Positions 1-64,000 of a stretch of 64,000 nt of DNA are shown here, in pieces; position 1 is the first letter of the stretch, and each line of letters opens with the position of its first letter. The stretch is from Vitrella brassicaformis CCMP3155 (taxonomy: Eukaryota; Protista; Chromerida): assembly GCA_001179505.1 (NCBI GenBank), contig CDMY01000413.1:1-64000 (forward strand), given 5' to 3'. Made by a program: the position numbers and the translations under genes. The notes under the pieces were generated by a model. The model had not been told where the DNA came from. It saw only the letters and a program-made list of their open reading frames with translations, and did no database searches.

Positions 1-1927
1 GGCAAGTCCCTCTACCTCCAGGCCGACCTCACGCACCGCATAGTCCACAACGAGACGCTGCTCGCCGTCATCCAAAACGAGAAGGCACGCCGCGTTGATC
101 AACACACCACACCACACTCATCCTTTCATCCATCCATCCATCCATGTGCTTATGGCCTCTCTCTCTCTCTCTCTGTGTGTGTGATGCAGCGTAGGTTTAA
201 TGGGAGTGAGGATGCGTTCCACACACACATCAACAACAAGTTCAGGGGCAGACGCGTCATGACCTCATACGTACGCACGCACAAAGTGCACACACACACA
301 CACACACACACATACACACAGATAGACACACAGACAGAGGGATGCGCCTCTCGTTCCAGGAGTCAGGGCCTGCCAACAATCGCAGCAGATCGCTCTACTG
401 CATCGACCGCGTACACACACCACACACCACACCCAGCGAGACAGCATACACACGGCCATTCACTTGTCCCTCTCTCCGTCTCTCTGTCTCTCTCTGTGTG
501 TCTGTGTGTGTGCAGGTAGAGTTTAACGAGTCGCCTGCGACCAGGTTCGAAGACGAGACCGGCAACGAGTCGACTTCCATAGCCGAGTACCTCTTCAAGA
601 TGTACGGCGTCCAGTGCCAGCCCAACCAGCCACTCGGTCAGTCTGTCAGTCAGTCTGTGTGGGAGGGAGGGAGGGAGGGAGGGAGGGAGCACCCCACACA
701 CACACGTCTGTCTGTCTGTCTGTCTGTGTGTATGTGCAGTGGTATCTGAGCGTCGCAAGAAGGTCACCAACAGCGAGGGTGTGCGTGAGGTCGTCATCCG
801 CACCATCAAACTCCCCGTCCAGTGCGTCACGCTGACCGGACTCGATGAGTAAGTGTATATGTGACCCCCTCCCACAGACCCACACAAACACACACACACA
901 CACACATCGCGGGCTGGCTGGCATCGCGTCCTTCTCTGTGTCTCTGTGTGTGGTCAGAACGATTCGCAACGACCACTTGATCAACGATTTGGTCGGCAAG
1001 AGCTGCCGCATGACCCCTGGTACCACACACACAGAGAGAGAGAGAGGCCACATCTATCTCATGGATTGATGAGTATGTGTGTGAGTGTGTGTAGACGATC
1101 GGCTGAAGCGTGCTCATCGGTTCGTCGAGGTGCTGCGTGACAATCCCAACTCCAAGGCCGTGCTGGACCGATTCAAACTGGAGATCTGCGACGCCAAGGA
1201 GAGCGTCACGGGCAGAAACCTCAACGCCTCAGCCAACGCCAACTCGTTCCGCGTACACACACACACACACCGCACACACACACACACAGCCACAGAGAGA
1301 CACATGTGTGTGTGTGCGCGTGTGTGTGTGTGTGGTCAGTACTACGACCGCCCCAACACGCTCGAGATGCTGCAGGCGCCGAGGGTTGGCAACAACGAGG
1401 ACATACTCAAGACCAGTCAGCCACACAGTGGCCACACACATGGATCGATGGATGGATGGATGGATCGGTGTCTCTCGCTCTGTGAATGTGTCAACAAACA
1501 CACAGGGTGGCGCTGCTTTGCGCGGCGACTCGCTCAACTTCACCCCCAAGGGCTGCCTCAAGCCCGTCAAGCTCGAAAAGTGGGTTGTGCTGGCCGACAA
1601 GGCCGATGCCATTCAAGCCCAGAGAATGGCACGCGACATCTCCAATAGTGCACACGGTAAGTGTGTGTGTGTCCACACACACGCCCACCAAGCTCATCTC
1701 ACGTGTGTGTGTGTGTGTGTGTGTGTTTAGCGCTGGGGATGGAGTGGGAGGCGCCCAAGTGGCTGATCAACATGTCGCTGACCGCCGCCCTCACACCCAA
1801 CACACCCGACCACCAGACCCTCGTCGAGGCCATCAGCGGAGCTCAGTGCGTGGTCTGCCTCCTCCCCAACTCCAAAGGGAAGACAACAAGCGTCACACTA
1901 CTCTACAACGTAATAACCAAACCACAG

Positions 1928-1958
<31 letters not shown>

Positions 1959-3919
1959 GGAGAAATGACGGGTCTTTGTGTGTGCGCGTCTGTGTGTGTC
2001 TTCAGGGGTTGAAGCAGCTGCTGACGTGCGAGGGCAGCCAGTGTGCGTGTGTGGCGCAGTGCGTGCAGAGCAAGACGCTGGCCAGCAACAAGTGGCAAAC
2101 AGCCGCCCCCAAAGTCGTCCAGCAGGTCAAAAAACAGGCTGCTGGCACACACACATCCATCCATCCATCCATGTGTGTGTGTGTGTAGATCGTGTGCAAG
2201 GTGGGCGGCGCTGCGTGGGGGCTCAACGTCAAGGGGCGGAAGCCATTGATGGCCATTGGCGTCGACTCGCGCAAGAGCAAAGGTCAGTCAGTGAGTTAGT
2301 GAGTTGAGGCCACACGAACAAAGGACAGAGACAGCCAAGTGCGTATGTGTGTGTGGGGTCTATGCGTGTGTGTGTGTGTGTGTGTGCAGATTCGACGATC
2401 GTGTCGCTGTGTGCAACGGTCGACGACCTGCTCATCGAGCACTTCACAAGTAAACCACTCAGCTACACTCACATCCAGCCACACACACACAAATGAAGCT
2501 GACACACACACACACACACCTCCCTCTCTGTGTGTGTGTGTGTGTGTGTGTGGTTCAGTGTCGCAAGTGTACTCGTCTGAGATGGACCTGGCCGGAGCAC
2601 TCAACAACTTCATCATCCGTATACACACACAGGCCCCCCCCCCCCCNNNNNNNNNNNNNNNNNNNNNNNNNNNNNNNNNNNNNNNNNNNNNNNNNNNNNN
2701 NNNNNNNNNNNNNNNNNNNNNNNNNNNNNNNNNNNNNNNNNNNNNNNNNNNNNNNNNNNNNNNNNNNNNNNNNNNNNNNNNNNNNNNNNNNNNNNNNNNN
2801 NNNNNNNNNNNNNNNNNNNNNNNNNNNNNNNNNNNNNNNNNNNNNNNNNNNNNNNNNNNNNNNNNNNNNNNNNNNNNNNNNNNNNNNNNNNNNNNNNNNN
2901 NNNNNNNNNNNNNNNNNNNNNNNNNNNNNNNNNNNNNNNNNNNNNNCCCCCCCCCCCCACACACACACACGCATCCAGGATGCATCTCTGTGTGCACATA
3001 ATCAAATCAGGTGCGTGTGAGACGTTCGAGCAGCGCAACAACATCGGCGTCCGGCGCGTCGTGATCTACAGGACCGGCCTGGGGGAGGGGCAGAAGGTCG
3101 CTGCAACCGAGTACGAGATTCCCGCCATCAAGACCGGCCTCGAGCACGCCTGCGGGGACAAGCAACCAGAACTCGCCGTCATACTCACCACACAACAGAC
3201 CAACACCAGGCACACACGTACACACACACACACACACGGAGAGAGCGAGAGAGAGAGACCAACGTGACGCACACCCATGTCTCTCTCTCTGTGTGTGTGT
3301 AGGTTCGCCACGGCAAAAGGCAACCAGCTGTCCAACCCCCCGCCCCTCTCCGTCTTCGACAAAGGTAAATCAGCGAGTGGATGGGGGCCGAGGTGACTGC
3401 TGTGTATGTGTGTGTGTGTGTGGATTGCAATCAGGTGTTGCCGACGATCAGGTGTACGTCTGGTACGGCTGCCATCAGCAGGTCACGAGCGGCACCATCA
3501 CACCCACCAAGTGAATGACCACCACACACACAGAGACACACAGACAGACAGACAGGCAGAGAGACACGCTATGTGAGTGTGTGTGTTGCTCTGCTTGCCT
3601 GTGTGGAACCAAACAAACAGGTATGAGGTGCTGCACATGGATCGCTGGGGCCTCGACGTCGACCAAACAATCAACCTGACCATGCAGCTCAGCACCATGT
3701 ACCAAAACTGGAGCGGTCAGCAACCAACAAGTGCCACACACAGACATACACACATTCTCCCCTCTCTCTCTCTGTGTGTGTGGGAATGTCTATCGATCAG
3801 GTCCGATTCGTGTGCCAGCGGTGGTCAAGATGGCCGAGGTGTGTGCTCGCAAGGTGGCTGAGAACCTGTCTTGCAAGACGCCCACTGACCACCTCGCCAC
3901 CCTCCCCTGGTACCTCTGA
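1..3919 (+). CDS. PIWI: Piwi-clade Argonaute protein (5' end lies outside the window; multi-exon)
   Basis: Spliced exons give QADLTHRIVHNETLL (Piwi N/L1), PAZ-like VEFNESPATRFEDETGNESTSIAEYLFKMYGVQCQPNQPL, MID pocket LYNGLK...AQCV...CKVGG, and PIWI motifs MAIGVD, VIYRTGLGEGQ, TNTRFA..NPPP, TPTKYEVL, MYQNWSGPIRVPA, ending LPWYL* at 3917-3919. Confidence 0.93.
2647..2946. other. Assembly gap (300 N) flanked by poly-C runs, apparently inside a Piwi intron
   Basis: Run of n in the sequence; the X-filled ORFs here are artefacts. Confidence 0.98.
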
Positions 3920-54974: not shown

Positions 54975-57781
54975 AAACGACACAACACACAGCACACGAC
55001 ATAGACACGGGACGGGTGTCATTTTCCCTCCCTCTCCCTGCCTCCCTGCCCGCCTGACTGCCCGCCTCCACACCTACATGGTGTGCAGGTCCCCATGCAG
55101 GATGCCCGGCAGCAGCGACTGTGCGAAGACCCTGGCCCCGCCGTAGTCGACCACCGTCTGCAGGAGCGAGCACACGTTGCGCGAGGCGGGACCCCGCCTG
55201 CCGCCCAGGATGCCCTGGTCGCCGATGGCCGGGGGCGGGAGGGGCGGCATGCGGCCCTGCACCACTGCATGGGGGTTCTCGGCCTGGTGCTGCAGGTTGT
55301 TGTACATCTCCACGGCCCTCAGGTCCAGCCGCACCGTCTCCCGCGTGGCGCTCGGACCCACCAGGGCCTCGGGCGTGTTGAGCCGGCCGACGTAGATCTG
55401 ACCGTCCTCGCCGTCATTCCTCTGGCCACTGGCGGGATCGCTTCTCTTGGCGGCGATGGCGCGCCTCTCGTTCTCTGATGAGAGGGGGATGCTGAGAAGG
55501 ATGTTGTTGTACAGGAAGATGGGCGCCTCGTTGGGGTGGGGGTCGTCGCGACTGCCGTCACCAGTGGTGGTGGTGGTGGGTGTGGATAAAGCTGCGACGT
55601 GCTCGGTGGGGTGGAAGGGCAGGGGAGGGGCGTCGCTGTTGATGGGCGGCACCTTGTTCTCGCGCACGCGCACCGCGCCGCTCGCCACTGCCGCGTGGAA
55701 GTCGCTGTACAGCTGCCGGTAAGGTACACACATGACATGTGGGAGGGAGAACGACAGAAATGAGAGCGATTCTGGCCCTGCCGTGGTGTTGTGTTGTGTG
55801 CTGGCTGGCTGACCGACCTTGAACATCATGCGGTCTCTGAACAGTTCGTCGACCTCTTTGAGGACGCTCTTGTCGGTGTTGCAGTTGGGGGGACACTCGG
55901 TGGGGGTGGGCGGGGGCGGGGGTCCCCCTCCAGCCTCCGCGACAGCGGGATCCTCCCTGGGCCTGTCCTTCTTGAGTGGCAGCTCCCTGAGCGTCTGGAA
56001 CTCCTCGTTCCACTCTCGCGGCACCCCCCATGGCTCCATTCCCACACCGTTTTCCGTCTCGAGCGACTCCTCCGCCCTGTCAAGGTCGTACTCATGCGCC
56101 TGCATAGCAAGCAACCAACATAGCCAATAATGTCAGTGTGTCTGTCTGTGTGTGTGTGAGCGAGCCTTCAGGTGCGCAAGTAGGTAAGGTACCTCGTGAG
56201 TGCGTGTGACCCAGTGAGTGACGGGAACGAGCAGCTGCACGAGTGGCGGCACCAGGATGGTGGCGAAGCAGTGGAGGTCCGACGGACGGATGGCTATCTG
56301 ATGCAGCGCCTGACCGAATCGGGGACTGACGGATGGACGGACAAACGACACAAACGTTTGACACATCCACCAGACGGACAGATGACTCACACAGTTCCTT
56401 CCGCATTGCATGGCTCCTGCAGCTGCGGCTACCCTACCTGTATGTGCGCAGCAGGTCCGCAAGCAGGTGGTAAGTGGCGTGTTTGGCGTCTTCCTGCCCC
56501 TCATGGCCGCCAGCGGGCTTGCCATTGGGCTGTCCGCCCCCACTACCCTCCGTCGTGTCCACCTCTGCGGTTCTGAAGTAGTCAGCAATGTCCCTGCTGC
56601 TTGAGTATCTGTCGGCGGCGCACTTGATGACCCTGAAGCCCTGCTCTGTGGCCGCGATGATGAGCATCTGGTCCTCCATGGTGCGAGCCTCGTAATACCA
56701 TATGTCGCCCCGCAGCCTCCTGCGCTTGGGTGGTGGGTTCCAGCCGCTGGAGACGATGTACTCGAGGGCCTTGATGTGCGCCTTGGTGAGCATCGGGGGT
56801 GGGGCCGTCACCAGGAGCACATCGTCCTCGAGCGTGCCGGCGGCATAGAGCTGCTCCGGCCCCTTGATGGTGGGAGGCATCACATCGGTCGGATCCCGCC
56901 GCAGCAGCCCTGTGCCATCTTCCCCTCCCCCCTGCCCTGTGGTGCCCTTGCCGTGCTTCCTCTCCTTGTCCTTCTTCTTGTGGTGGTGGGACTTGGACGA
57001 TGACGGCTTCTGATGGTTGTGGTTGTTGCTGGCGTCGCTCTCGGGTGCTGAGGGGTGGCCGTTGGCGGTGGGCTGTGCTGGGGGCGTGTTCTGGATGTCC
57101 TGGAGGTCGATCTGGTTGGAGATGGCGCCGGTGCTGTCGGCATTGACGATGATGTGCTGGTCCTTGGTCAGGACGTCGCGGAGCCGACGCACGTGCAGCT
57201 TCACCGTCCGCTCGTTGTAGGGATCTGAAGAATGAGGGTGGGAGGAATCAGACAGAGACCATCAGGTGGGCTGGGTGCGTGTGATTGTGTTTCAGGTGCG
57301 GACGGACAGACATACCCCCGACTAGTTTGAGAACGGATCCATCCTTGAGCCCCTCGGTGCTCCGCAGCTCTGCAGAGCTCTGCAGACGGCGACCCTCATA
57401 CTCAAGCTGTGACACACACGCAGGCACACACATCCCACGGCACGGCACGGCACGGCACGGCACAGAAAACGACACACACCAAGCCAAGTGAGACTGAATG
57501 GTGTGGGCGAGGAGCCTCCCTCCCTCACGTGATAGGCCGTGAAGAAGCATGTCGGCAGCAGCTCCACCAGGAGGTTCTCGATCTCACTCGCACTGTCGTG
57601 AGGCGATATGTCTGAACACACAGCACCACCACACCACACCACACACATACTTGCTCCATGCATCAGCTTCAGCCGTTTGCACCTGCCCATTTATCCGTCT
57701 AGTTTGCGTACCGACGTAGACCGACGCCCCAGCCGGGGTCGGGAGTTCGACTTTGAGCTTCCATTGCGCCCTGCACTCCAT
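51052..57781 (-). CDS. CLU1: Clueless/CLU (clustered mitochondria) family protein with TPR region
   Basis: LPTCFFTAYH, PYNERTVKLHVRRLR, SGWNPPP...GDIWY, EWNEEFQTLRELP, FLYNNI, VVDYGG.RVFAQSLLPGIL, GADGRLYICDLSRLTPRDLN, RPEFV, HRHGVNLRYLG and TPR-like helices. Confidence 0.93.
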
Positions 57782-58106
57782 CCGCTCAAGCCAGGCAGAC
57801 GAATGGGATGGTGACCTCCAAAGCAGTGAGGCGGTCTGAAAACACACACGCACAAGAGGCCGGAGATTGGACTGTCCTCTCTGCCATCCATTGGGCAAGT
57901 CGTCCGTTTGTGTGCAGCTCACCTCTGCCAATGCGACTCGCGAGCCTAGGGGCACTCACGGCGGCGAACACACCTGCCCTCCACTTGCCCTCCTTCCTCT
58001 GGGGCGAAGCTCGCAATTGGCAATCCGGGTCGACATCGGCAGAAACGCTGACTGAGGAGGCATTATACTCCCCTCAGGGCCCGGAGATTGCCAGTTCTTT
58101 CTAGAA

Positions 58107-61100
58107 ATGAACGGAAAGTGCCAGGTGAGCCCGGGGAAAGCGCTGGATGGTTTCTTGACGTTTTCACTCATTGCATGCAGGCGTGACGACAGTACCAGCT
58201 GCTATCAGACGATGCTTGTTGTTGCGGCCTCTCACAGCCTGACCATTCGACGCAAGAAGCCGTGGAAGCGGGCCGTTTGGGATCCCTGCAGTCAGGTAGT
58301 ACCAGGAGGGAAAAATGCGCCCCTGTGTCTGCCTGCAGATGTGGTGTGTCTGACATGGTTCGCGTGTGTGCAGGGCGCCTCATCTGATGGAGTTAGTTTC
58401 GTGTTGGTTGACGAGCATCGCGTGGCGGAGCTGTCAGAGGACGGCACGGCCCCCCGGAAGAATGCTGTCACCCGGCGCATGGGCCACCGCCTCAGGCTCA
58501 TCTCCCACCAATCATCAGGTACTCTCACTCAGAATTCACGGCCCCTCTATTCACCACACTGTGCTGCCTCCGTCCATGTGCGTGTGGGTGTCAGGTGGGT
58601 ATGTGGCTGGTGTGCAGTCTAGTGGCGGCATGTTTGTGTGGAATCGGCATTCGGGCACTGTGCACATCGTCGCCGCCACCCCCCTCCTCCCGTCCCTTAT
58701 AGAGGAGGCCATCCGATGGCTGTAAGTCCACACATTCGCGCATAATGCCGATTGGCTCTCACATGCGTCTGTCTGTGCTGTGGGTGTGTGGCGAGCCTCT
58801 CTCTCGTCGTTCAGCGATTCGGGGTCCGGGGGCGACGGCGGTGTGGGTTTGTCTCAGTACCTGCCCTCCTCCCTGCTCAGGCTGCGCAAGAGCCGCCAGG
58901 CGCAGCTCGCGGCCACTGCTATGATACGCTCCATCGACGTCAGCGCCGATGGTGTGGACATGATAGATATGTCACAACAAGGCGTTGATCAATCCATCGA
59001 GATAGCATAGCTGCCTGCATTCATGTGCCCTTTGTGCATCTGTCTGTCAGGCTGCCTGGTAGCGGTGACGACGCAAGAGGGCAACTTGTGGATCTGGACT
59101 GCACTCCAATCGGCCGCTGAGCACGGTAGGTCGCATCGCAGCCAAGGCTTCGCTTCACGCCAGCTCAGCACGCATAATGTCTGTCTGTCTGCATGTTTGT
59201 GTGTGTGCGGCGGTTGATGCGATGTGTGCAGGGCAGTGGCATTGCGTTGAGCCCCTCCAGCGGCCCTTGCCGTCACAACCCGCCGCCGCTGCTCCCATAG
59301 CCAAAGTCCAGAGGGTCGTCTTCATGCGCGACGAGGTATCCTGACAGAAAGACCCACGCCCACAACGCCACTACACGCCGATGCTTCTGCCCTGCTCCCT
59401 GCTGCAGAGGGTGGGGCAAGCCGTCCTAATGGTTAGTGTGGGCCTCTATCGCTTCCAGGAGGCGGCCTGCAACGCAATCGCAGCCTATGGAGACCACGGT
59501 GCGGCGCCATGCGCCTCATGTGGGGGTGTCTACACAGTGCCGCACGGCAGTGGGAGCCGCAGCAGCGTTGTCTCGCCTGCGAGGGGGGATGACTGTCCGG
59601 CGGGCATGAACGATGACAGTGGAGGTGTCGATGGGGCCGAGGAGGAGGAGGAGATCGCGGCGCTCTGCACATTCACCCTCGCCCTGCCCAAGGACGAGCA
59701 GAGGAAAGGCGAAGGCCCTTCGTGTCGCTACGCCCAAGCGTCCTTCCTGATCCCTGTCGGCCTGTCGGAGGAGCACCTTTACACACCCCCACCATCAGCC
59801 AAGACCACATGTCCGACCATGCTACTCGACCTCAGCAGCAGCGACCCTCCCCCTGACTGTCCGTCCCCTCCCTGCCTCCCCGTGGTAGCGCTGGCCATCA
59901 ATGCGAGCGTCCCCACCAAGGCCCAGCTGCTGCTCGTGCACATCCCGGGGCTCATCATGGGGCTGGCTTCACTCGCCAGGGGCCGCCGGCTCGGCAGCAC
60001 AGGGCAGCCCTGTGGTGGTCACTGCCCGCTGTGTGAGGGATTGGGTGATGGTGTGAGGGGGGCCGTGACGCCTCCATGGGTGCCTGTGGCGACGAGGGTG
60101 CAGCTGGCCAAGGTCTTCCTGCAGGAGGTGCCATCCACTGCAGCTGTGGCAGCTGGTGGCCAGCCGGCTGTGGGGCTGGCGGCTGTCGACATGGTCGCCG
60201 GTGTGGCATGGGAAAGTGGTGGCCGATTCCTCGCCGTTGCATTCCGGTGCGGTGACACGACGATAGACAGACAGCAAATGCGTCCGTCCGTCATTCTGAT
60301 GTGAGTGGTGTGGTGTATTTTCGTACGCGTGCAGGTCTGGTCTGGTCGGCTTCATCTCGGCTGTGGGCGGAGGTCTCTTGGCAACATTCCATCCCTTGGC
60401 CGGGTCGTCCCTCCAGTCCGAGCCCATCCTCTCGCCCTTCTGGGCCTTCTTCGCCCCTCCCTTCGCCCCTCCCACGCCCCCAGCCTCACAGCCCCATCGC
60501 GACAAATACCCGCCGCTTCACTCTATCGGCTTCCACCCGTCAGCGCCCCTGATGCTCCGGAGCGACGGCTTCAGTGTGTGCAGCTTCTCCCTCACACTGC
60601 TGCCGTCGACCAGCCCGACCATCCCCCGACCACCGCACGAGGGGCTCACACATGTCCTCCAGCGTGTGTGGGAGGAGGTGGTCCACCCCTGCACGGCCAA
60701 ATACGACGGTGCTGTGCGGCCCAAGGGCGTCTTGGCGGCCGGGGAGGACGGCGAGGGGCGACAGGGGCTGGCTTTGGAGGGCGTGTCGGCTTATTTGGGC
60801 CGTGTGGGTGAGGTCGACTCGTTGCTTGCGCTTGAGATGGTGTGGTGGATATGTCGGTGGATGACCCTGGCTGTGAGCCTCGACCCGGGCCATGTGCTCG
60901 CCGGCGTGAGGCAGCTGCTGCGCTGGGCGCTCAAGCGCCAGAAAGCATCAGACCAACACACAGGGTGTGCAAACCAACACCGGCGTGAAGGCAGTACTTT
61001 TCCTGACCTGTCTCTCTTTCCTGATCTCCATCTTCATGCAGAGCGTGTGTCGGCGCTTGTTTGCTGGAGGTACTGGTGGCGCATCGTCTTGCGCTCGAGT

Positions 61101-64000
61101 CGCCCTGCAGTGACTCTGCCGCACTGAGCACTGGGCTCCCCTCCCTGGACTTGCCTCTGGCCACTGGGTCCTCTTGTCCAGCCGGCAAGATCGCCAGGCT
61201 CCGCTCGCAGGCCAGCCTCGCGGGGCTCCGTCTGGAGATTCCCATCCTACCCCTGGCACCCCACAGCATGCCCCGCCCGCAGCCCCGCCCCGCCACACCC
61301 ACACACGCCAGGTGCGCGACGGCTTCGCTGATGCGTCTGCTTGAGCCGGTGGAGGCGCCGGAGCGGGACCACGAAGCAGACAAGCAGGAGGCAACGGCGA
61401 GGGCGGGAGAGAATGCGGCTGTGTTGGTTCGGGAGGCGCTGGCAGATGTCAAGGTGGTGTGTGAGGTGTTGCAACTCGGTCTCGGGCCTGCCGACAGAGC
61501 CAGAAGGGCCAAGAGAGAGGGAGCCACCGTGACGCACATGGGCCCCCATGTGGTGGTCGAGCCACACTACCCAAACGCCCACGCTGAGAGAGCGGGCGAC
61601 GACCACAAGGGGCAAGACCGGCGGAGCGAGACGCGGCACAACGACTGGAGGAAGAGCAAGGCGCGCGTGGGGCTGACATGGCTTCTCGAGGCTGGGACCG
61701 TTCTGTCGCACTTCATCGAAGGCGCACCGACGACGCCTCGCGAGGGAGCTATCGAGGCCCGCACGATCGCCCGACGGGTGGTGGAGACGCATGCGCGGCA
61801 CAAAGACGACACCCTTCCCGCGTCGTTGTCGCAGCCCGCTGAGAAGGCGTGGCTGACTGTGATGGCGGCACTCGTGGCGTCCAATGCGGCCGAGGTCGCC
61901 TCAGCCATCCTGAGCATGCTGTGCGACCGGTCCCTGTCCTCACCCCTCAGCCGATGGGAGGTCGTCACTCTGGTGGCGGCGACCGTCCTGCACATGGCAC
62001 TGCACCACCAGCAAGGCGACCAGACCAACCAGGACAAGGACCCCTGTGCGTCAAAGACCCCCTCCTCGGCCCCTCTGCCCAGCTCAGCTGCTTCCATCGC
62101 CATTGTGTGGACGCTCGATCTCACACGGGCGGTGCAGCAGTGGCTGCAGGACCCCCCTCCTACCCCCCCGGCATTCGAATCGATGGGGCGGCTGGCAGAC
62201 ACCGAGTCGGTCAAGCTGGGCCGCGACCTGACCACCCCTGCGGTGGGGCTGCTGGCGGTGGCGGGCAGGCGCAAGAGGCGGCGGGAGGAGGGCCCGAGGA
62301 GCACCGACTGGGAGGAGGGACACATCCCTGACATGGCCCGCCCGCTGCACGATGACGTGGTGGAGTCGACGGCAGAGTCCCCGTCACAGCCGCGGATGGC
62401 GTCGTCATCCACTGTGGCCGCCATGTTGCTGGACCGATCGGCACATGAGGCCATGTCGCCGGCCATTCCCCAGCAGCAGCAGCAGCAGCCGCCACCCACG
62501 GCATTCGTGTCTGAGCGAGATGCGATGCATCTGGAGGAGCTGCTCCTGTTCGTGTCGCTGTGCGGGTGTCTGGTGTCGGGCCAGCCTGTGCTGGCGCTGC
62601 TGCTCACCTGCATGGGGAGGGGCGAGGCGGCCGACTCCAAGCAGACACACAAGGAGGGAGTGCTGACGGTGCCTGCTGCTGTTGTCGAAACCTTGGTTGC
62701 GGCTTTGGAGGGCCGAGCGGGTGCAGACATCAAGTGCCAGGTTGGAGAGGCTCTCGTGGATGCCGTCACGGGCTGCGCGTGCACCCTCATCCAGAGAGTG
62801 AGCAGAATGAGGGACGAGGGATCATGTGCTGAATCGTAGAGTGTGACTTTGTTGCTCCGTTTCTGTGTTGCTTCCGCAGATTGACTGCAGGGACGCCGGA
62901 AAGACATCTATGTCGCCATTGCGTGTGTTGACGTCGGTCGCCACAGCCGCCCTGCGTGACAAGGAGGGGGGCCCGAACGTGCGGATCAGCTGCAGGTTCA
63001 TTCGGGAAGCCCTCTTCAGGTGAGTTCTAATGGGTCAATGACGCTGTGAGTGACACAATGCTCTTTCTCTGCTAATCCAACCACCTTTTGGTGGTCTGGT
63101 CTCTCTGTCTGCTCCGTGTGTGGTGCACTGCAGGTACTGCTACGCCATTGATCGGTACGGCAGTGTGCTGTGGCTGGGCCACACGGCATCCCTACTACAC
63201 GACATGCGGCGCACACACATGTGGCACCGTGGCATGGAGCCACAAGAGGACCCTTACAAATCCGCTGTGGTGGAGCGCATCCCCAAGCCGCTGGTGGGAG
63301 TCGGCACCGTGGAGCTCGCGAGGCTGGTCCTCGCCTCCCTGCGGCTGCACGTGGAGGCCGCCTTATCCTCGACACTCTTCAACGAGGACAGCATGCCCCT
63401 CCCAGTCCCCTTCGTCAATCGGCTGCGCCACCTGCTGACGGACGAGGCAGACATCGATGCCGTGGCCCCCCGCCTGCTGGGCTATGTGCCCCGCTGTGGG
63501 CTCTGGCGTGTGGCGACGACGTGGGACACGGTGCTGCCCACCATGATGATGCAGCGTGACGACGGAGGCGCCATCGAGACGTCTGCTCTGCTCGGCAAGA
63601 TCGCTGTGCCGCTGCAGCCGTCGGGTGAGCCCTTCTCGTCACCCCCATCATGGACACCGGTGGACATCGCCCCCCTCGGCCATGGCACCTCATCGGCGCC
63701 GTCCGACCCTCCCCCGCTGCCCGCGGAGCTGCTGACATTCGAGACCAGCCAGCTGCAGACCATGGCGCAGCTGGAGGACCACCTGTGCGCGGCCCTGGGC
63801 CTTCTGGACATCTACCGCAACGTCCGGGCCGGCCTGCAGGAGAAAACAGCCACAGGTGCGGCGGATGCGAAGGAGGCGGCCGCGCTGGAGAGTGTGGCTG
63901 AGGGGCTGCAGCACCGGATAGGGAGGGGAGTCTGGCTGCTGGTGGTGCGGGACAAGCTGCTGAAGGCCTTGCTGCGGAAGGAGCTGGCGCAGTCGGTTGC
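58107..64000 (+). CDS. CPLANE1: Large multi-exon protein with an N-terminal beta-propeller-like region resembling CPLANE1/JBTS17 (C5orf42); runs off the window end
   Basis: Colinear blocks match the human CPLANE1 N-terminus as I recall it: RKKPWKRAVW, FVLVDEHRVAEL, YVAGVQSSGGMFVWN, ALCTFT, VALAINASVPTKAQLLLV, VAGVAWESGGRFLAVAFRCG, SIGFHPSAPLMLRSDGFSV. Not database-verified. Confidence 0.7.

What the first reader, a model, noticed from the sequence alone, without database searches (positions are those of the whole stretch)
58107..64000. Probable CPLANE1/JBTS17 (Joubert-syndrome ciliogenesis scaffold) homolog in an alveolate alga
Seen: a large spliced gene whose first ~2.5 kb encodes, in order, IRRKKPWKRAVW, VSFVLVDEHRVAELS, YVAGVQSSGGMFVWNRH, IDVSADG..VAVTTQEGNLWIW, ALCTFT, VALAINASVPTKAQLLLVHI, MVAGVAWESGGRFLAVAFRCG and HSIGFHPSAPLMLRSDGFSVCSFSL. 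From memory, human CPLANE1 has in the same order KQKKPWPRVSW, AVFLLDDKFINEINL, WLAGVLTTGELFLWNKD, YVSGNGKRIVLITPSGCIFLWE, CLCSFT, LAVTLNQKDPKATQVLFINT, WVGDISWTHDSLFLACMLKRG and FSIKAHSRLPYLVISDGYMV. Established: CPLANE1 acts with Inturned, Fuzzy and WDPCP to recruit IFT-A to basal bodies and has been studied mainly in animals. Inference: a colinear eight-block match implies orthology of the N-terminal region and an ancient CPLANE module in a flagellate-forming relative of apicomplexans.
Basis: partly seen in the sequence, partly recalled or inferred. Interest (0 to 1): 0.78.

Follow-up and report, generated by a model that had tools for sequence, protein, structure and literature searches.

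The report
Large propeller-helix gene, CPLANE1 link unproven
The stretch is the first half of a real, expressed, 15-exon gene of the alga Vitrella brassicaformis. Its 3,032-residue protein has the overall layout of the human ciliopathy protein CPLANE1, but no tool available here could confirm that the two are related.

Summary
Observation confirmed. All eight quoted peptides are in the + strand. One spliced RNA contig (8,977 nt, ten GT..AG introns of 72-114 nt) joins them in a single open frame. The public prediction P0001 (3,032 aa) is identical to every exon.

There are two corrections. Translation starts at 58212, not 58107.

The CPLANE1 reading could not be tested against a real CPLANE1 sequence, because no tool returned one. 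The human blocks remain a recollection.
- Every test that could be run gave no support. There was no Pfam hit (no PF15392 Joubert, Frtz, RAB3GAP2 or WD40). No relative appeared among 1.84 billion representatives for exon 7, in three word searches, or in PDB sequences.
- The nearest named clusters by language-model features are RAB3GAP2 and Med16, not CPLANE1.
- The genome's only tri-longin genes are MON1 and CCZ1. No FUZ, INTU or WDPCP was found, though the search sensitivity is low.
- In favour: size and layout (propeller-like N-terminus, helical to about 1760, disordered C-terminal 1,270 aa) mirror the published JBTS17 model.

My estimate is about 0.5 for a diverged CPLANE1 homologue. The "ancient CPLANE module" claim is not supported. 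The scan noted the same gene once more (s1-218647), on this same DNA.

The parts
58188..58211 (+). 5' untranslated part held in the spliced RNA contig (the contig end is not necessarily the transcript start)
   Evidence: record 9 begins at 58188; in-frame stop upstream at 58053
58212..58295 (+). exon 1, residues 1-28, start codon at 58212; holds block 1 (IRRKKPWKRAVW, residues 12-23)
58374..58518 (+). exon 2; holds block 2 (VSFVLVDEHRVAELS, residues 35-49)
58595..58721 (+). exon 3; holds block 3 (YVAGVQSSGGMFVWNRH, residues 79-95)
58815..58951 (+). exon 4; ends with IDVSADG, the first half of block 4
59051..59125 (+). exon 5; CLVAVTTQEGNLWIW, the second half of block 4, joined to exon 4 across a split glycine codon
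59232..59335 (+). exon 6, residues about 190-224
59408..60246 (+). exon 7, residues 225-504; holds blocks 5, 6 and 7 between low-complexity insertions; language-model features point to beta-propeller families
60335..60964 (+). exon 8, residues 504-714; continues the blade begun in exon 7 (SGLVGFISAVGGG...), holds block 8, then the helical part begins
   Evidence: (weak ANAPC4_WD40 match at 486-523 across the junction)
61042..62797 (+). exon 9, residues 714-1299; helical segments broken by long low-complexity insertions, including a polyQ run near 62462-62502
62880..63019 (+). exon 10, residues 1300-1346
63134..64000 (+). exon 11, cut by the window end (it runs to about 64214 of the contig); helical region. 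Four more exons follow outside the window and the stop codon follows 68567.

Best explanation
Window 58212-64000 holds the first 11 of 15 exons of a single-copy, transcribed gene of Vitrella brassicaformis CCMP3155. It encodes a 3,032-residue protein. The N-terminal ~590 residues look like a non-canonical beta-propeller with lineage-specific insertions. A mostly alpha-helical region follows to about residue 1760, and then a ~1,270-residue disordered tail. I think it is most likely a strongly diverged homologue of CPLANE1/JBTS17, a propeller-plus-helical-bundle scaffold with a long disordered tail. In animals that protein sits at the basal body and helps bring IFT-A to the base of the growing cilium. 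In Vitrella it would act when flagellated zoospores are built. It would apparently do so without a recognisable Inturned-Fuzzy-WDPCP partner set. Shown: the gene structure, the splicing, the transcription and the single copy. Crudely indicated: the layout. Inferred: the homology to CPLANE1 and the function.
For: Splicing, open frame and expression. Single copy. Propeller-like N-terminus: for exon 7 all the nearest named clusters are beta-propeller families, at scores of 0.83-0.87, which count as leads only. There is also a weak WD40-type match across the exon 7/8 junction. Helical middle: DSSP of both low-confidence models is all-helical from about 600 and across 1190-1760. Disordered tail: composition. 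This layout and length (3,032 aa) parallel human JBTS17, which is a WDR propeller 1-425, helical bundles 426-1569 and a disordered region 1570-3197 (PMC13692098). The organism's lineage keeps flagellar and IFT components (PMC4501334), and IFT140-like exons are in the genome. That condition is untested.
Against: No tool-derived sequence link to CPLANE1 exists. PF15392 (Joubert) is absent from the genome scan and from P0001. phmmer of exon 7, which holds three of the eight blocks, against 1.84 billion representatives found only the protein itself. Word searches with exon 7, exon 9 and residues 1-1750 found only self. The language-model search of residues 1-1750 among named clusters put RAB3GAP2 (0.90, 181 shared features) and Med16 first, and no Joubert-bearing cluster was listed. 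No FUZ, INTU or WDPCP was found; the tri-longin genes present are MON1 and CCZ1. Generic WD-type blade motifs can mimic short block matches between unrelated propellers.
Confidence: 0.5

Rival explanations
1. A lineage-specific (chromerid or myzozoan) giant propeller-solenoid protein of the protocoatomer type, with no specific relationship to CPLANE1. On this reading the eight-block resemblance comes from generic blade motifs plus an unreliable recollection of the human sequence. Its function would be some membrane or trafficking scaffold.
For: No relative of any kind was found in searches that cover billions of proteins. There was no Pfam family and no PDB relative. Exon 7 features resemble many unrelated propeller families about equally. 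CPLANE partners are absent.
Against: The overall size and three-part layout match JBTS17 unusually well. The exon 7 search needed about 45 bits to pass in a library of 1.84 billion, so a true relative at 25-30% identity would be missed. The word searches need shared exact 5-mers.
Confidence: 0.35
2. A diverged member of another known propeller-plus-helical family: a second RAB3GAP2-like regulatory subunit, a WDPCP/Fritz-like protein, or Med16.
For: Residues 1-1750 score 0.90 with 181 of 256 shared features against RAB3GAP2 clusters (14 of the top 100 hits) and 0.89 against Med16. The first ~800 residues of JBTS17 are themselves reported to resemble WDPCP.
Against: Recognition was low (1543), so a high score is weak evidence. 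P0001 has no RAB3GAP2_N, RAB3GAP2_C, Frtz or Med16 Pfam hit even at E 10. The genome has its own RAB3GAP2_N gene at C781 (60.5 bits), and P0001:1-720 shows no similarity to it or to any other locus. P0001 is more than twice as long as these proteins. If that limit also applies to cluster representatives (my inference), full-length CPLANE1 could not have been a hit.
Confidence: 0.1

Closest known systems
CPLANE1 / JBTS17 / C5orf42 (human, 3,197 aa)
   Same: Length is about 3,000 residues. The order is an N-terminal non-canonical WD-like propeller, a long helical region, then a disordered C-terminal ~40%. The organism builds flagella and keeps IFT genes.
   Different: There is no PF15392 Joubert domain and no sequence hit from any search. 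The propeller region is about 165 residues longer because of insertions. No INTU, FUZ or WDPCP partners were detected in the genome.
WDPCP / Fritz (CPLANE subunit; PF11768)
   Same: It has a propeller followed by an alpha-solenoid. JBTS17 1-800 is reported to resemble it structurally.
   Different: No Frtz match on P0001. The genome's best Frtz hit (12.7 bits) lies in an ordinary WD40 protein on another contig. WDPCP has no ~2,000-residue extension. No PDB WDPCP hit.
RAB3GAP2 (Rab3 GAP non-catalytic subunit; PF14655/PF14656)
   Same: It is the nearest named cluster set by language-model features for residues 1-1750 (0.90). It has a propeller plus a helical region.
   Different: No Pfam match on P0001. 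A separate bona fide RAB3GAP2_N gene lies at C781. No similarity between the two loci. RAB3GAP2 is about 1,400 aa and lacks the long disordered tail.

Membership tests
CPLANE1/JBTS17 | Significant, reciprocal sequence or profile similarity to bona fide CPLANE1 orthologues | tested here: inconclusive
   No tool supplied a CPLANE1 sequence or an N-terminal profile. phmmer of exon 7 against 1.84 billion representatives found self only at E<=0.001. Three word searches found self only. These thresholds and the word index would miss relatives at 25-30% identity.
CPLANE1/JBTS17 | Pfam PF15392 (Joubert syndrome-associated domain) | tested here: not met
   No match in the six-frame genome scan at E<=10, on any exon ORF, or on full-length P0001.
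CPLANE1/JBTS17 | Architecture: N-terminal WDR propeller, two helical bundles, long C-terminal disordered region, about 3,000 aa (PMC13692098) | tested here: inconclusive
   Length is 3,032 aa. Propeller-type features for exon 7 are below the 0.9 lead threshold. Secondary structure is helical from about 600 to 1760, but both AlphaFold models have pLDDT of 37-42. Composition is disordered from about 1800. The result is consistent but crude.
CPLANE1/JBTS17 | Partners INTU, FUZ, WDPCP (and RSG1) encoded in the same genome | tested here: not met
   Fuz_longin_1 and Intu_longin_1 each hit one gene. These match MON1 and CCZ1 in the PDB, not Fuzzy or Inturned. The Frtz hit is only 12.7 bits and lies in a generic WD40 protein. 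Sensitivity is low: MON1's own third longin domain was not detected either. RSG1 was not tested.
CPLANE1/JBTS17 | Basal-body localisation and recruitment of peripheral IFT-A | not testable with these tools
   This needs tagging and localisation in zoospores. Only transcription in one RNA data set is shown.
WDPCP/Fritz | Pfam PF11768 (Frtz) match | tested here: not met
   No hit on P0001 at E<=10.
RAB3GAP2 | Pfam PF14655/PF14656 match | tested here: not met
   No hit on P0001. The genome's RAB3GAP2_N match is at C781. Only language-model features suggest a likeness.
Canonical WD40-repeat proteins | PF00400 repeats above threshold | tested here: not met
   No WD40 hit. The only trace is ANAPC4_WD40 at E 0.12, 13.1 bits, residues 486-523.

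The most novel reading that the evidence does not exclude
CPLANE1 is much older than animals. A chromerid alga keeps a full-size orthologue although it has no detectable Inturned-Fuzzy-WDPCP module. On this reading the ancestral job of CPLANE1 at the basal body, such as IFT-A or TTBK2-type recruitment, does not depend on the Rab23-GEF part of CPLANE.
Probability: 0.3. Interest if true: 0.6.

Novelty: new member of a known kind. Interest (0 to 1): 0.4.

Why it matters
CPLANE1 is a major Joubert and OFD6 syndrome gene. Its structure and evolutionary origin are poorly described; the 2026 preprint read here (PMC13692098) is a prediction for the human protein. A genuine orthologue in an alveolate would date the protein to near the eukaryotic root. 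It would also show which blocks of the propeller are under the longest constraint, which helps in reading patient missense variants. And it would suggest that CPLANE1 can work without the Inturned-Fuzzy-WDPCP module. If the resemblance is not real, this is one more orphan giant protein of a chromerid and of little general interest. At present the evidence does not decide between the two.

Tried and rejected
- Pfam scans of every exon ORF and of P0001 gave nothing.
- PF15392 in the genome gave nothing.
- Word searches with exon 7, exon 9 and P0001 region 1-1750 found self only.
- The full HMMER search with exon 7 found self only.
- PDB sequence searches with the whole protein, 1-620 and 600-1760 gave nothing relevant.
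- A metagenome contig scan matched 598 patterns, none confirmed.
- Cluster look-up shows a singleton without a visible name.
- AlphaFold2 without an alignment on 1-720 and 1190-1760 gave pLDDT 37 and 42. These models are unusable, so no fold search was run.
- My own guess of a 38-nt exon after 60251 was wrong; RNA shows the donor at 60247.
- I first read the Fuz_longin_1 and Intu_longin_1 hits as possible FUZ and INTU. I rejected this because the Pfam models also cover MON1/HPS1 and CCZ1/HPS4, and the PDB matches are MON1 and CCZ1.
- The weak third Fuz_longin_1 candidate at C420 is a short hydrophobic ORF, not a longin gene.
- The Frtz candidate at C342 is a generic WD40 protein.
- Literature searches for CPLANE1/C5orf42/JBTS17 in protists, for its Pfam/PANTHER/InterPro identifiers and for three of the recalled human peptides found nothing useful. 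PMC4978421 is not held.
- The alveolate Nd-GTPase paper is unrelated to CPLANE.
The spliced model was searched exon by exon by reference. The full-length protein used later is the public prediction returned by the search tool.
Full report
**What is there**

The genome is 72,700,666 bp in 1,064 contigs. That is exactly the figure given for Vitrella brassicaformis CCMP3155 in Woo et al. 2015 (PMC4501334). The window is contig C413:1-64000 of 83,557 bp.

I laid the contigs of four public runs on 58100-64000 (5,901 letters, within the operators' limit). Run X4 holds one spliced contig of 8,977 nt. It starts at 58188, runs past the window end, and skips ten introns, all GT..AG, of 72-114 nt. Runs X3 and X5, from the same sample, hold the unspliced DNA.

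I took the exon limits from that contig and translated exon by exon while carrying the codon phase. The frame is open through all 11 exons in the window, 1,634 codons.

The one full HMMER search returned a public protein, P0001 (3,032 aa). Its residues 225-503 are identical to exon 7. It maps exactly to 15 exons, 58212-68567 of the contig.

- The start codon is at 58212, not 58107.
- The intron after block 7 begins at 60247.

Searches of the spliced model were made exon by exon by reference. Full-length work used P0001 as the tool returned it.

**What the protein looks like**

Pfam finds no family on any exon ORF or on P0001. The only trace is ANAPC4_WD40 at E 0.12 over residues 486-523, which spans the exon 7/8 junction.

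For exon 7, the nearest named clusters by language-model features are all beta-propeller families (RSE1/DDB1/CPSF_A, Nup133_N, Vps41, VPS11_N, LLGL/IFT140). Their scores are 0.83-0.87, which count as leads only.

AlphaFold2 without an alignment failed, with mean pLDDT of 37 for residues 1-720 and 42 for 1190-1760. I ran no fold search on these models. Their secondary structure is strands in the first ~240 residues and helices from about 600 and throughout 1190-1760.

A crude composition scan calls the protein ordered to about 1750 and disordered from about 1800 to the end.

The gene has no paralogue in the genome.

**Test of the CPLANE1 reading**

A 2026 preprint describes human JBTS17 as follows (PMC13692098):
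- a WDR propeller at 1-425
- helical bundles at 426-818 and 819-1569
- a basal-body-localising and disordered region at 1570-3197
- InterPro recognises only two WD40-like stretches
- the first ~800 residues resemble WDPCP

The Vitrella protein has the same order of parts and nearly the same length. That is the only positive evidence that tools and papers gave me.

Everything else was negative or blank:
- PF15392 (Joubert) is absent from the genome scan and from P0001.
- phmmer of exon 7, which holds three of the eight blocks, against 1.84 billion representatives found only P0001.
- Word searches with exon 7, exon 9 and residues 1-1750 found only P0001.
- PDB sequences gave nothing.
- A metagenome scan gave nothing.
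- The language-model search with residues 1-1750 among named clusters put RAB3GAP2 (0.90, 181 of 256 features) and Med16 first, and listed no Joubert-bearing cluster. Recognition was low.

These blanks are weak evidence:
- A hit needs about 45 bits to pass in a library of that size.
- The word index needs shared 5-mers.
- The Atlas takes queries of at most 2,046 residues. If its cluster representatives are limited likewise (my inference), full-length CPLANE1 could not have been listed.

No tool returned a CPLANE1 sequence. A text search for three of them in the paper library found nothing.

Conditional on those strings being right, my hand count is about 45 identities in about 130 ungapped, colinear positions. 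That would be decisive. A recollection can also drift towards the sequence being read, and WD-type blades share motifs of the "G-x-hydrophobic-x-hydrophobic-W-N/D" kind.

**Test of the "CPLANE module" inference**

- Fuz_longin_1 hits one gene (C367, 58.7 bits) and Intu_longin_1 hits one gene (C526, 39.6 bits).
- Both Pfam models also cover MON1/HPS1 and CCZ1/HPS4.
- In the PDB, which holds the Fuzzy-Inturned-WDPCP structure according to PMC9012472, the two genes match MON1 (E 8e-18) and CCZ1 (E 6e-4) and nothing else of that family.
- A third weak candidate is a hydrophobic short ORF.
- The best Frtz match (12.7 bits) lies in a generic WD40 protein.
- The third longin models found nothing significant, not even in MON1, which shows how insensitive six-frame scans are here.
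- IFT140-like exons are present. Woo et al. report flagellar components in the chromerid lineage.

The flagellar context is therefore real, but a CPLANE module is not shown.

**Rivals**

RAB3GAP2 is unlikely as an identity. The genome has its own RAB3GAP2_N gene at C781 (60.5 bits). P0001 has no such Pfam match and no similarity to that locus. WDPCP and Med16 likewise lack any sequence support.

The serious rival is a lineage-specific propeller-solenoid protein with no specific tie to CPLANE1.

**Verdict**

The gene, its splicing and its expression are established. The layout fits JBTS17. Homology to CPLANE1 is a plausible lead that I put at about 0.5. The claim of an ancient CPLANE module is not supported.

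The literature held here contains no report of CPLANE1 outside animals. If the homology is confirmed, it would be a modestly interesting new member of a known family. Orthology databases that I could not consult may already list it.

The scan recorded the same gene a second time from an overlapping window (s1-218647). That is the same DNA and the same kind of reader, so it is not independent evidence.

Noticed in passing
L005 (G000:C367:41302-44562), match at C367:42526-43062, - strand: A 658-aa open frame carries a Fuz/MON1/HPS1-type first longin domain (58.7 bits). It matches MON1 chains in the PDB (E 8e-18). This is the Vitrella MON1 gene.
   Followed up: partly
L008 (G000:C526:2422-5607), match at C526:3922-4107, - strand: A short exon carries an Intu/CCZ1/HPS4-type first longin domain (39.6 bits). 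Its best PDB match is CCZ1 (E 6e-4), so it is probably the CCZ1 partner of MON1.
   Followed up: partly
L010 (G000:C781:109071-112277), match at C781:110571-110777: An exon matches RAB3GAP2_N at 60.5 bits. The genome therefore has a bona fide RAB3GAP2 elsewhere.
   Followed up: no
window 59178-59207 (intron 5): A 30-nt stretch rich in TGTC/TGTG lies on several other contigs of the DNA runs. Depth is higher there (up to 205) and there are loose ends on both sides. It is a short dispersed repeat inside the intron.
   Followed up: no
window 62462-62502 (exon 9): read laying skipped this stretch as a repeat. It lies near the polyQ run (QQQQQQ) of the protein.
   Followed up: no
window 56434-57204, - strand: A 256-aa ORF lies just upstream on the opposite strand. 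It has a His/Lys-rich low-complexity stretch and is probably part of the divergently oriented neighbouring gene. It was not examined.
   Followed up: no
G000:C408:21467-22554, - strand: Three colinear exon-sized matches to the first IFT140 propeller (19-22 bits each) suggest an IFT140-like gene. This is consistent with retained intraflagellar transport.
   Followed up: no
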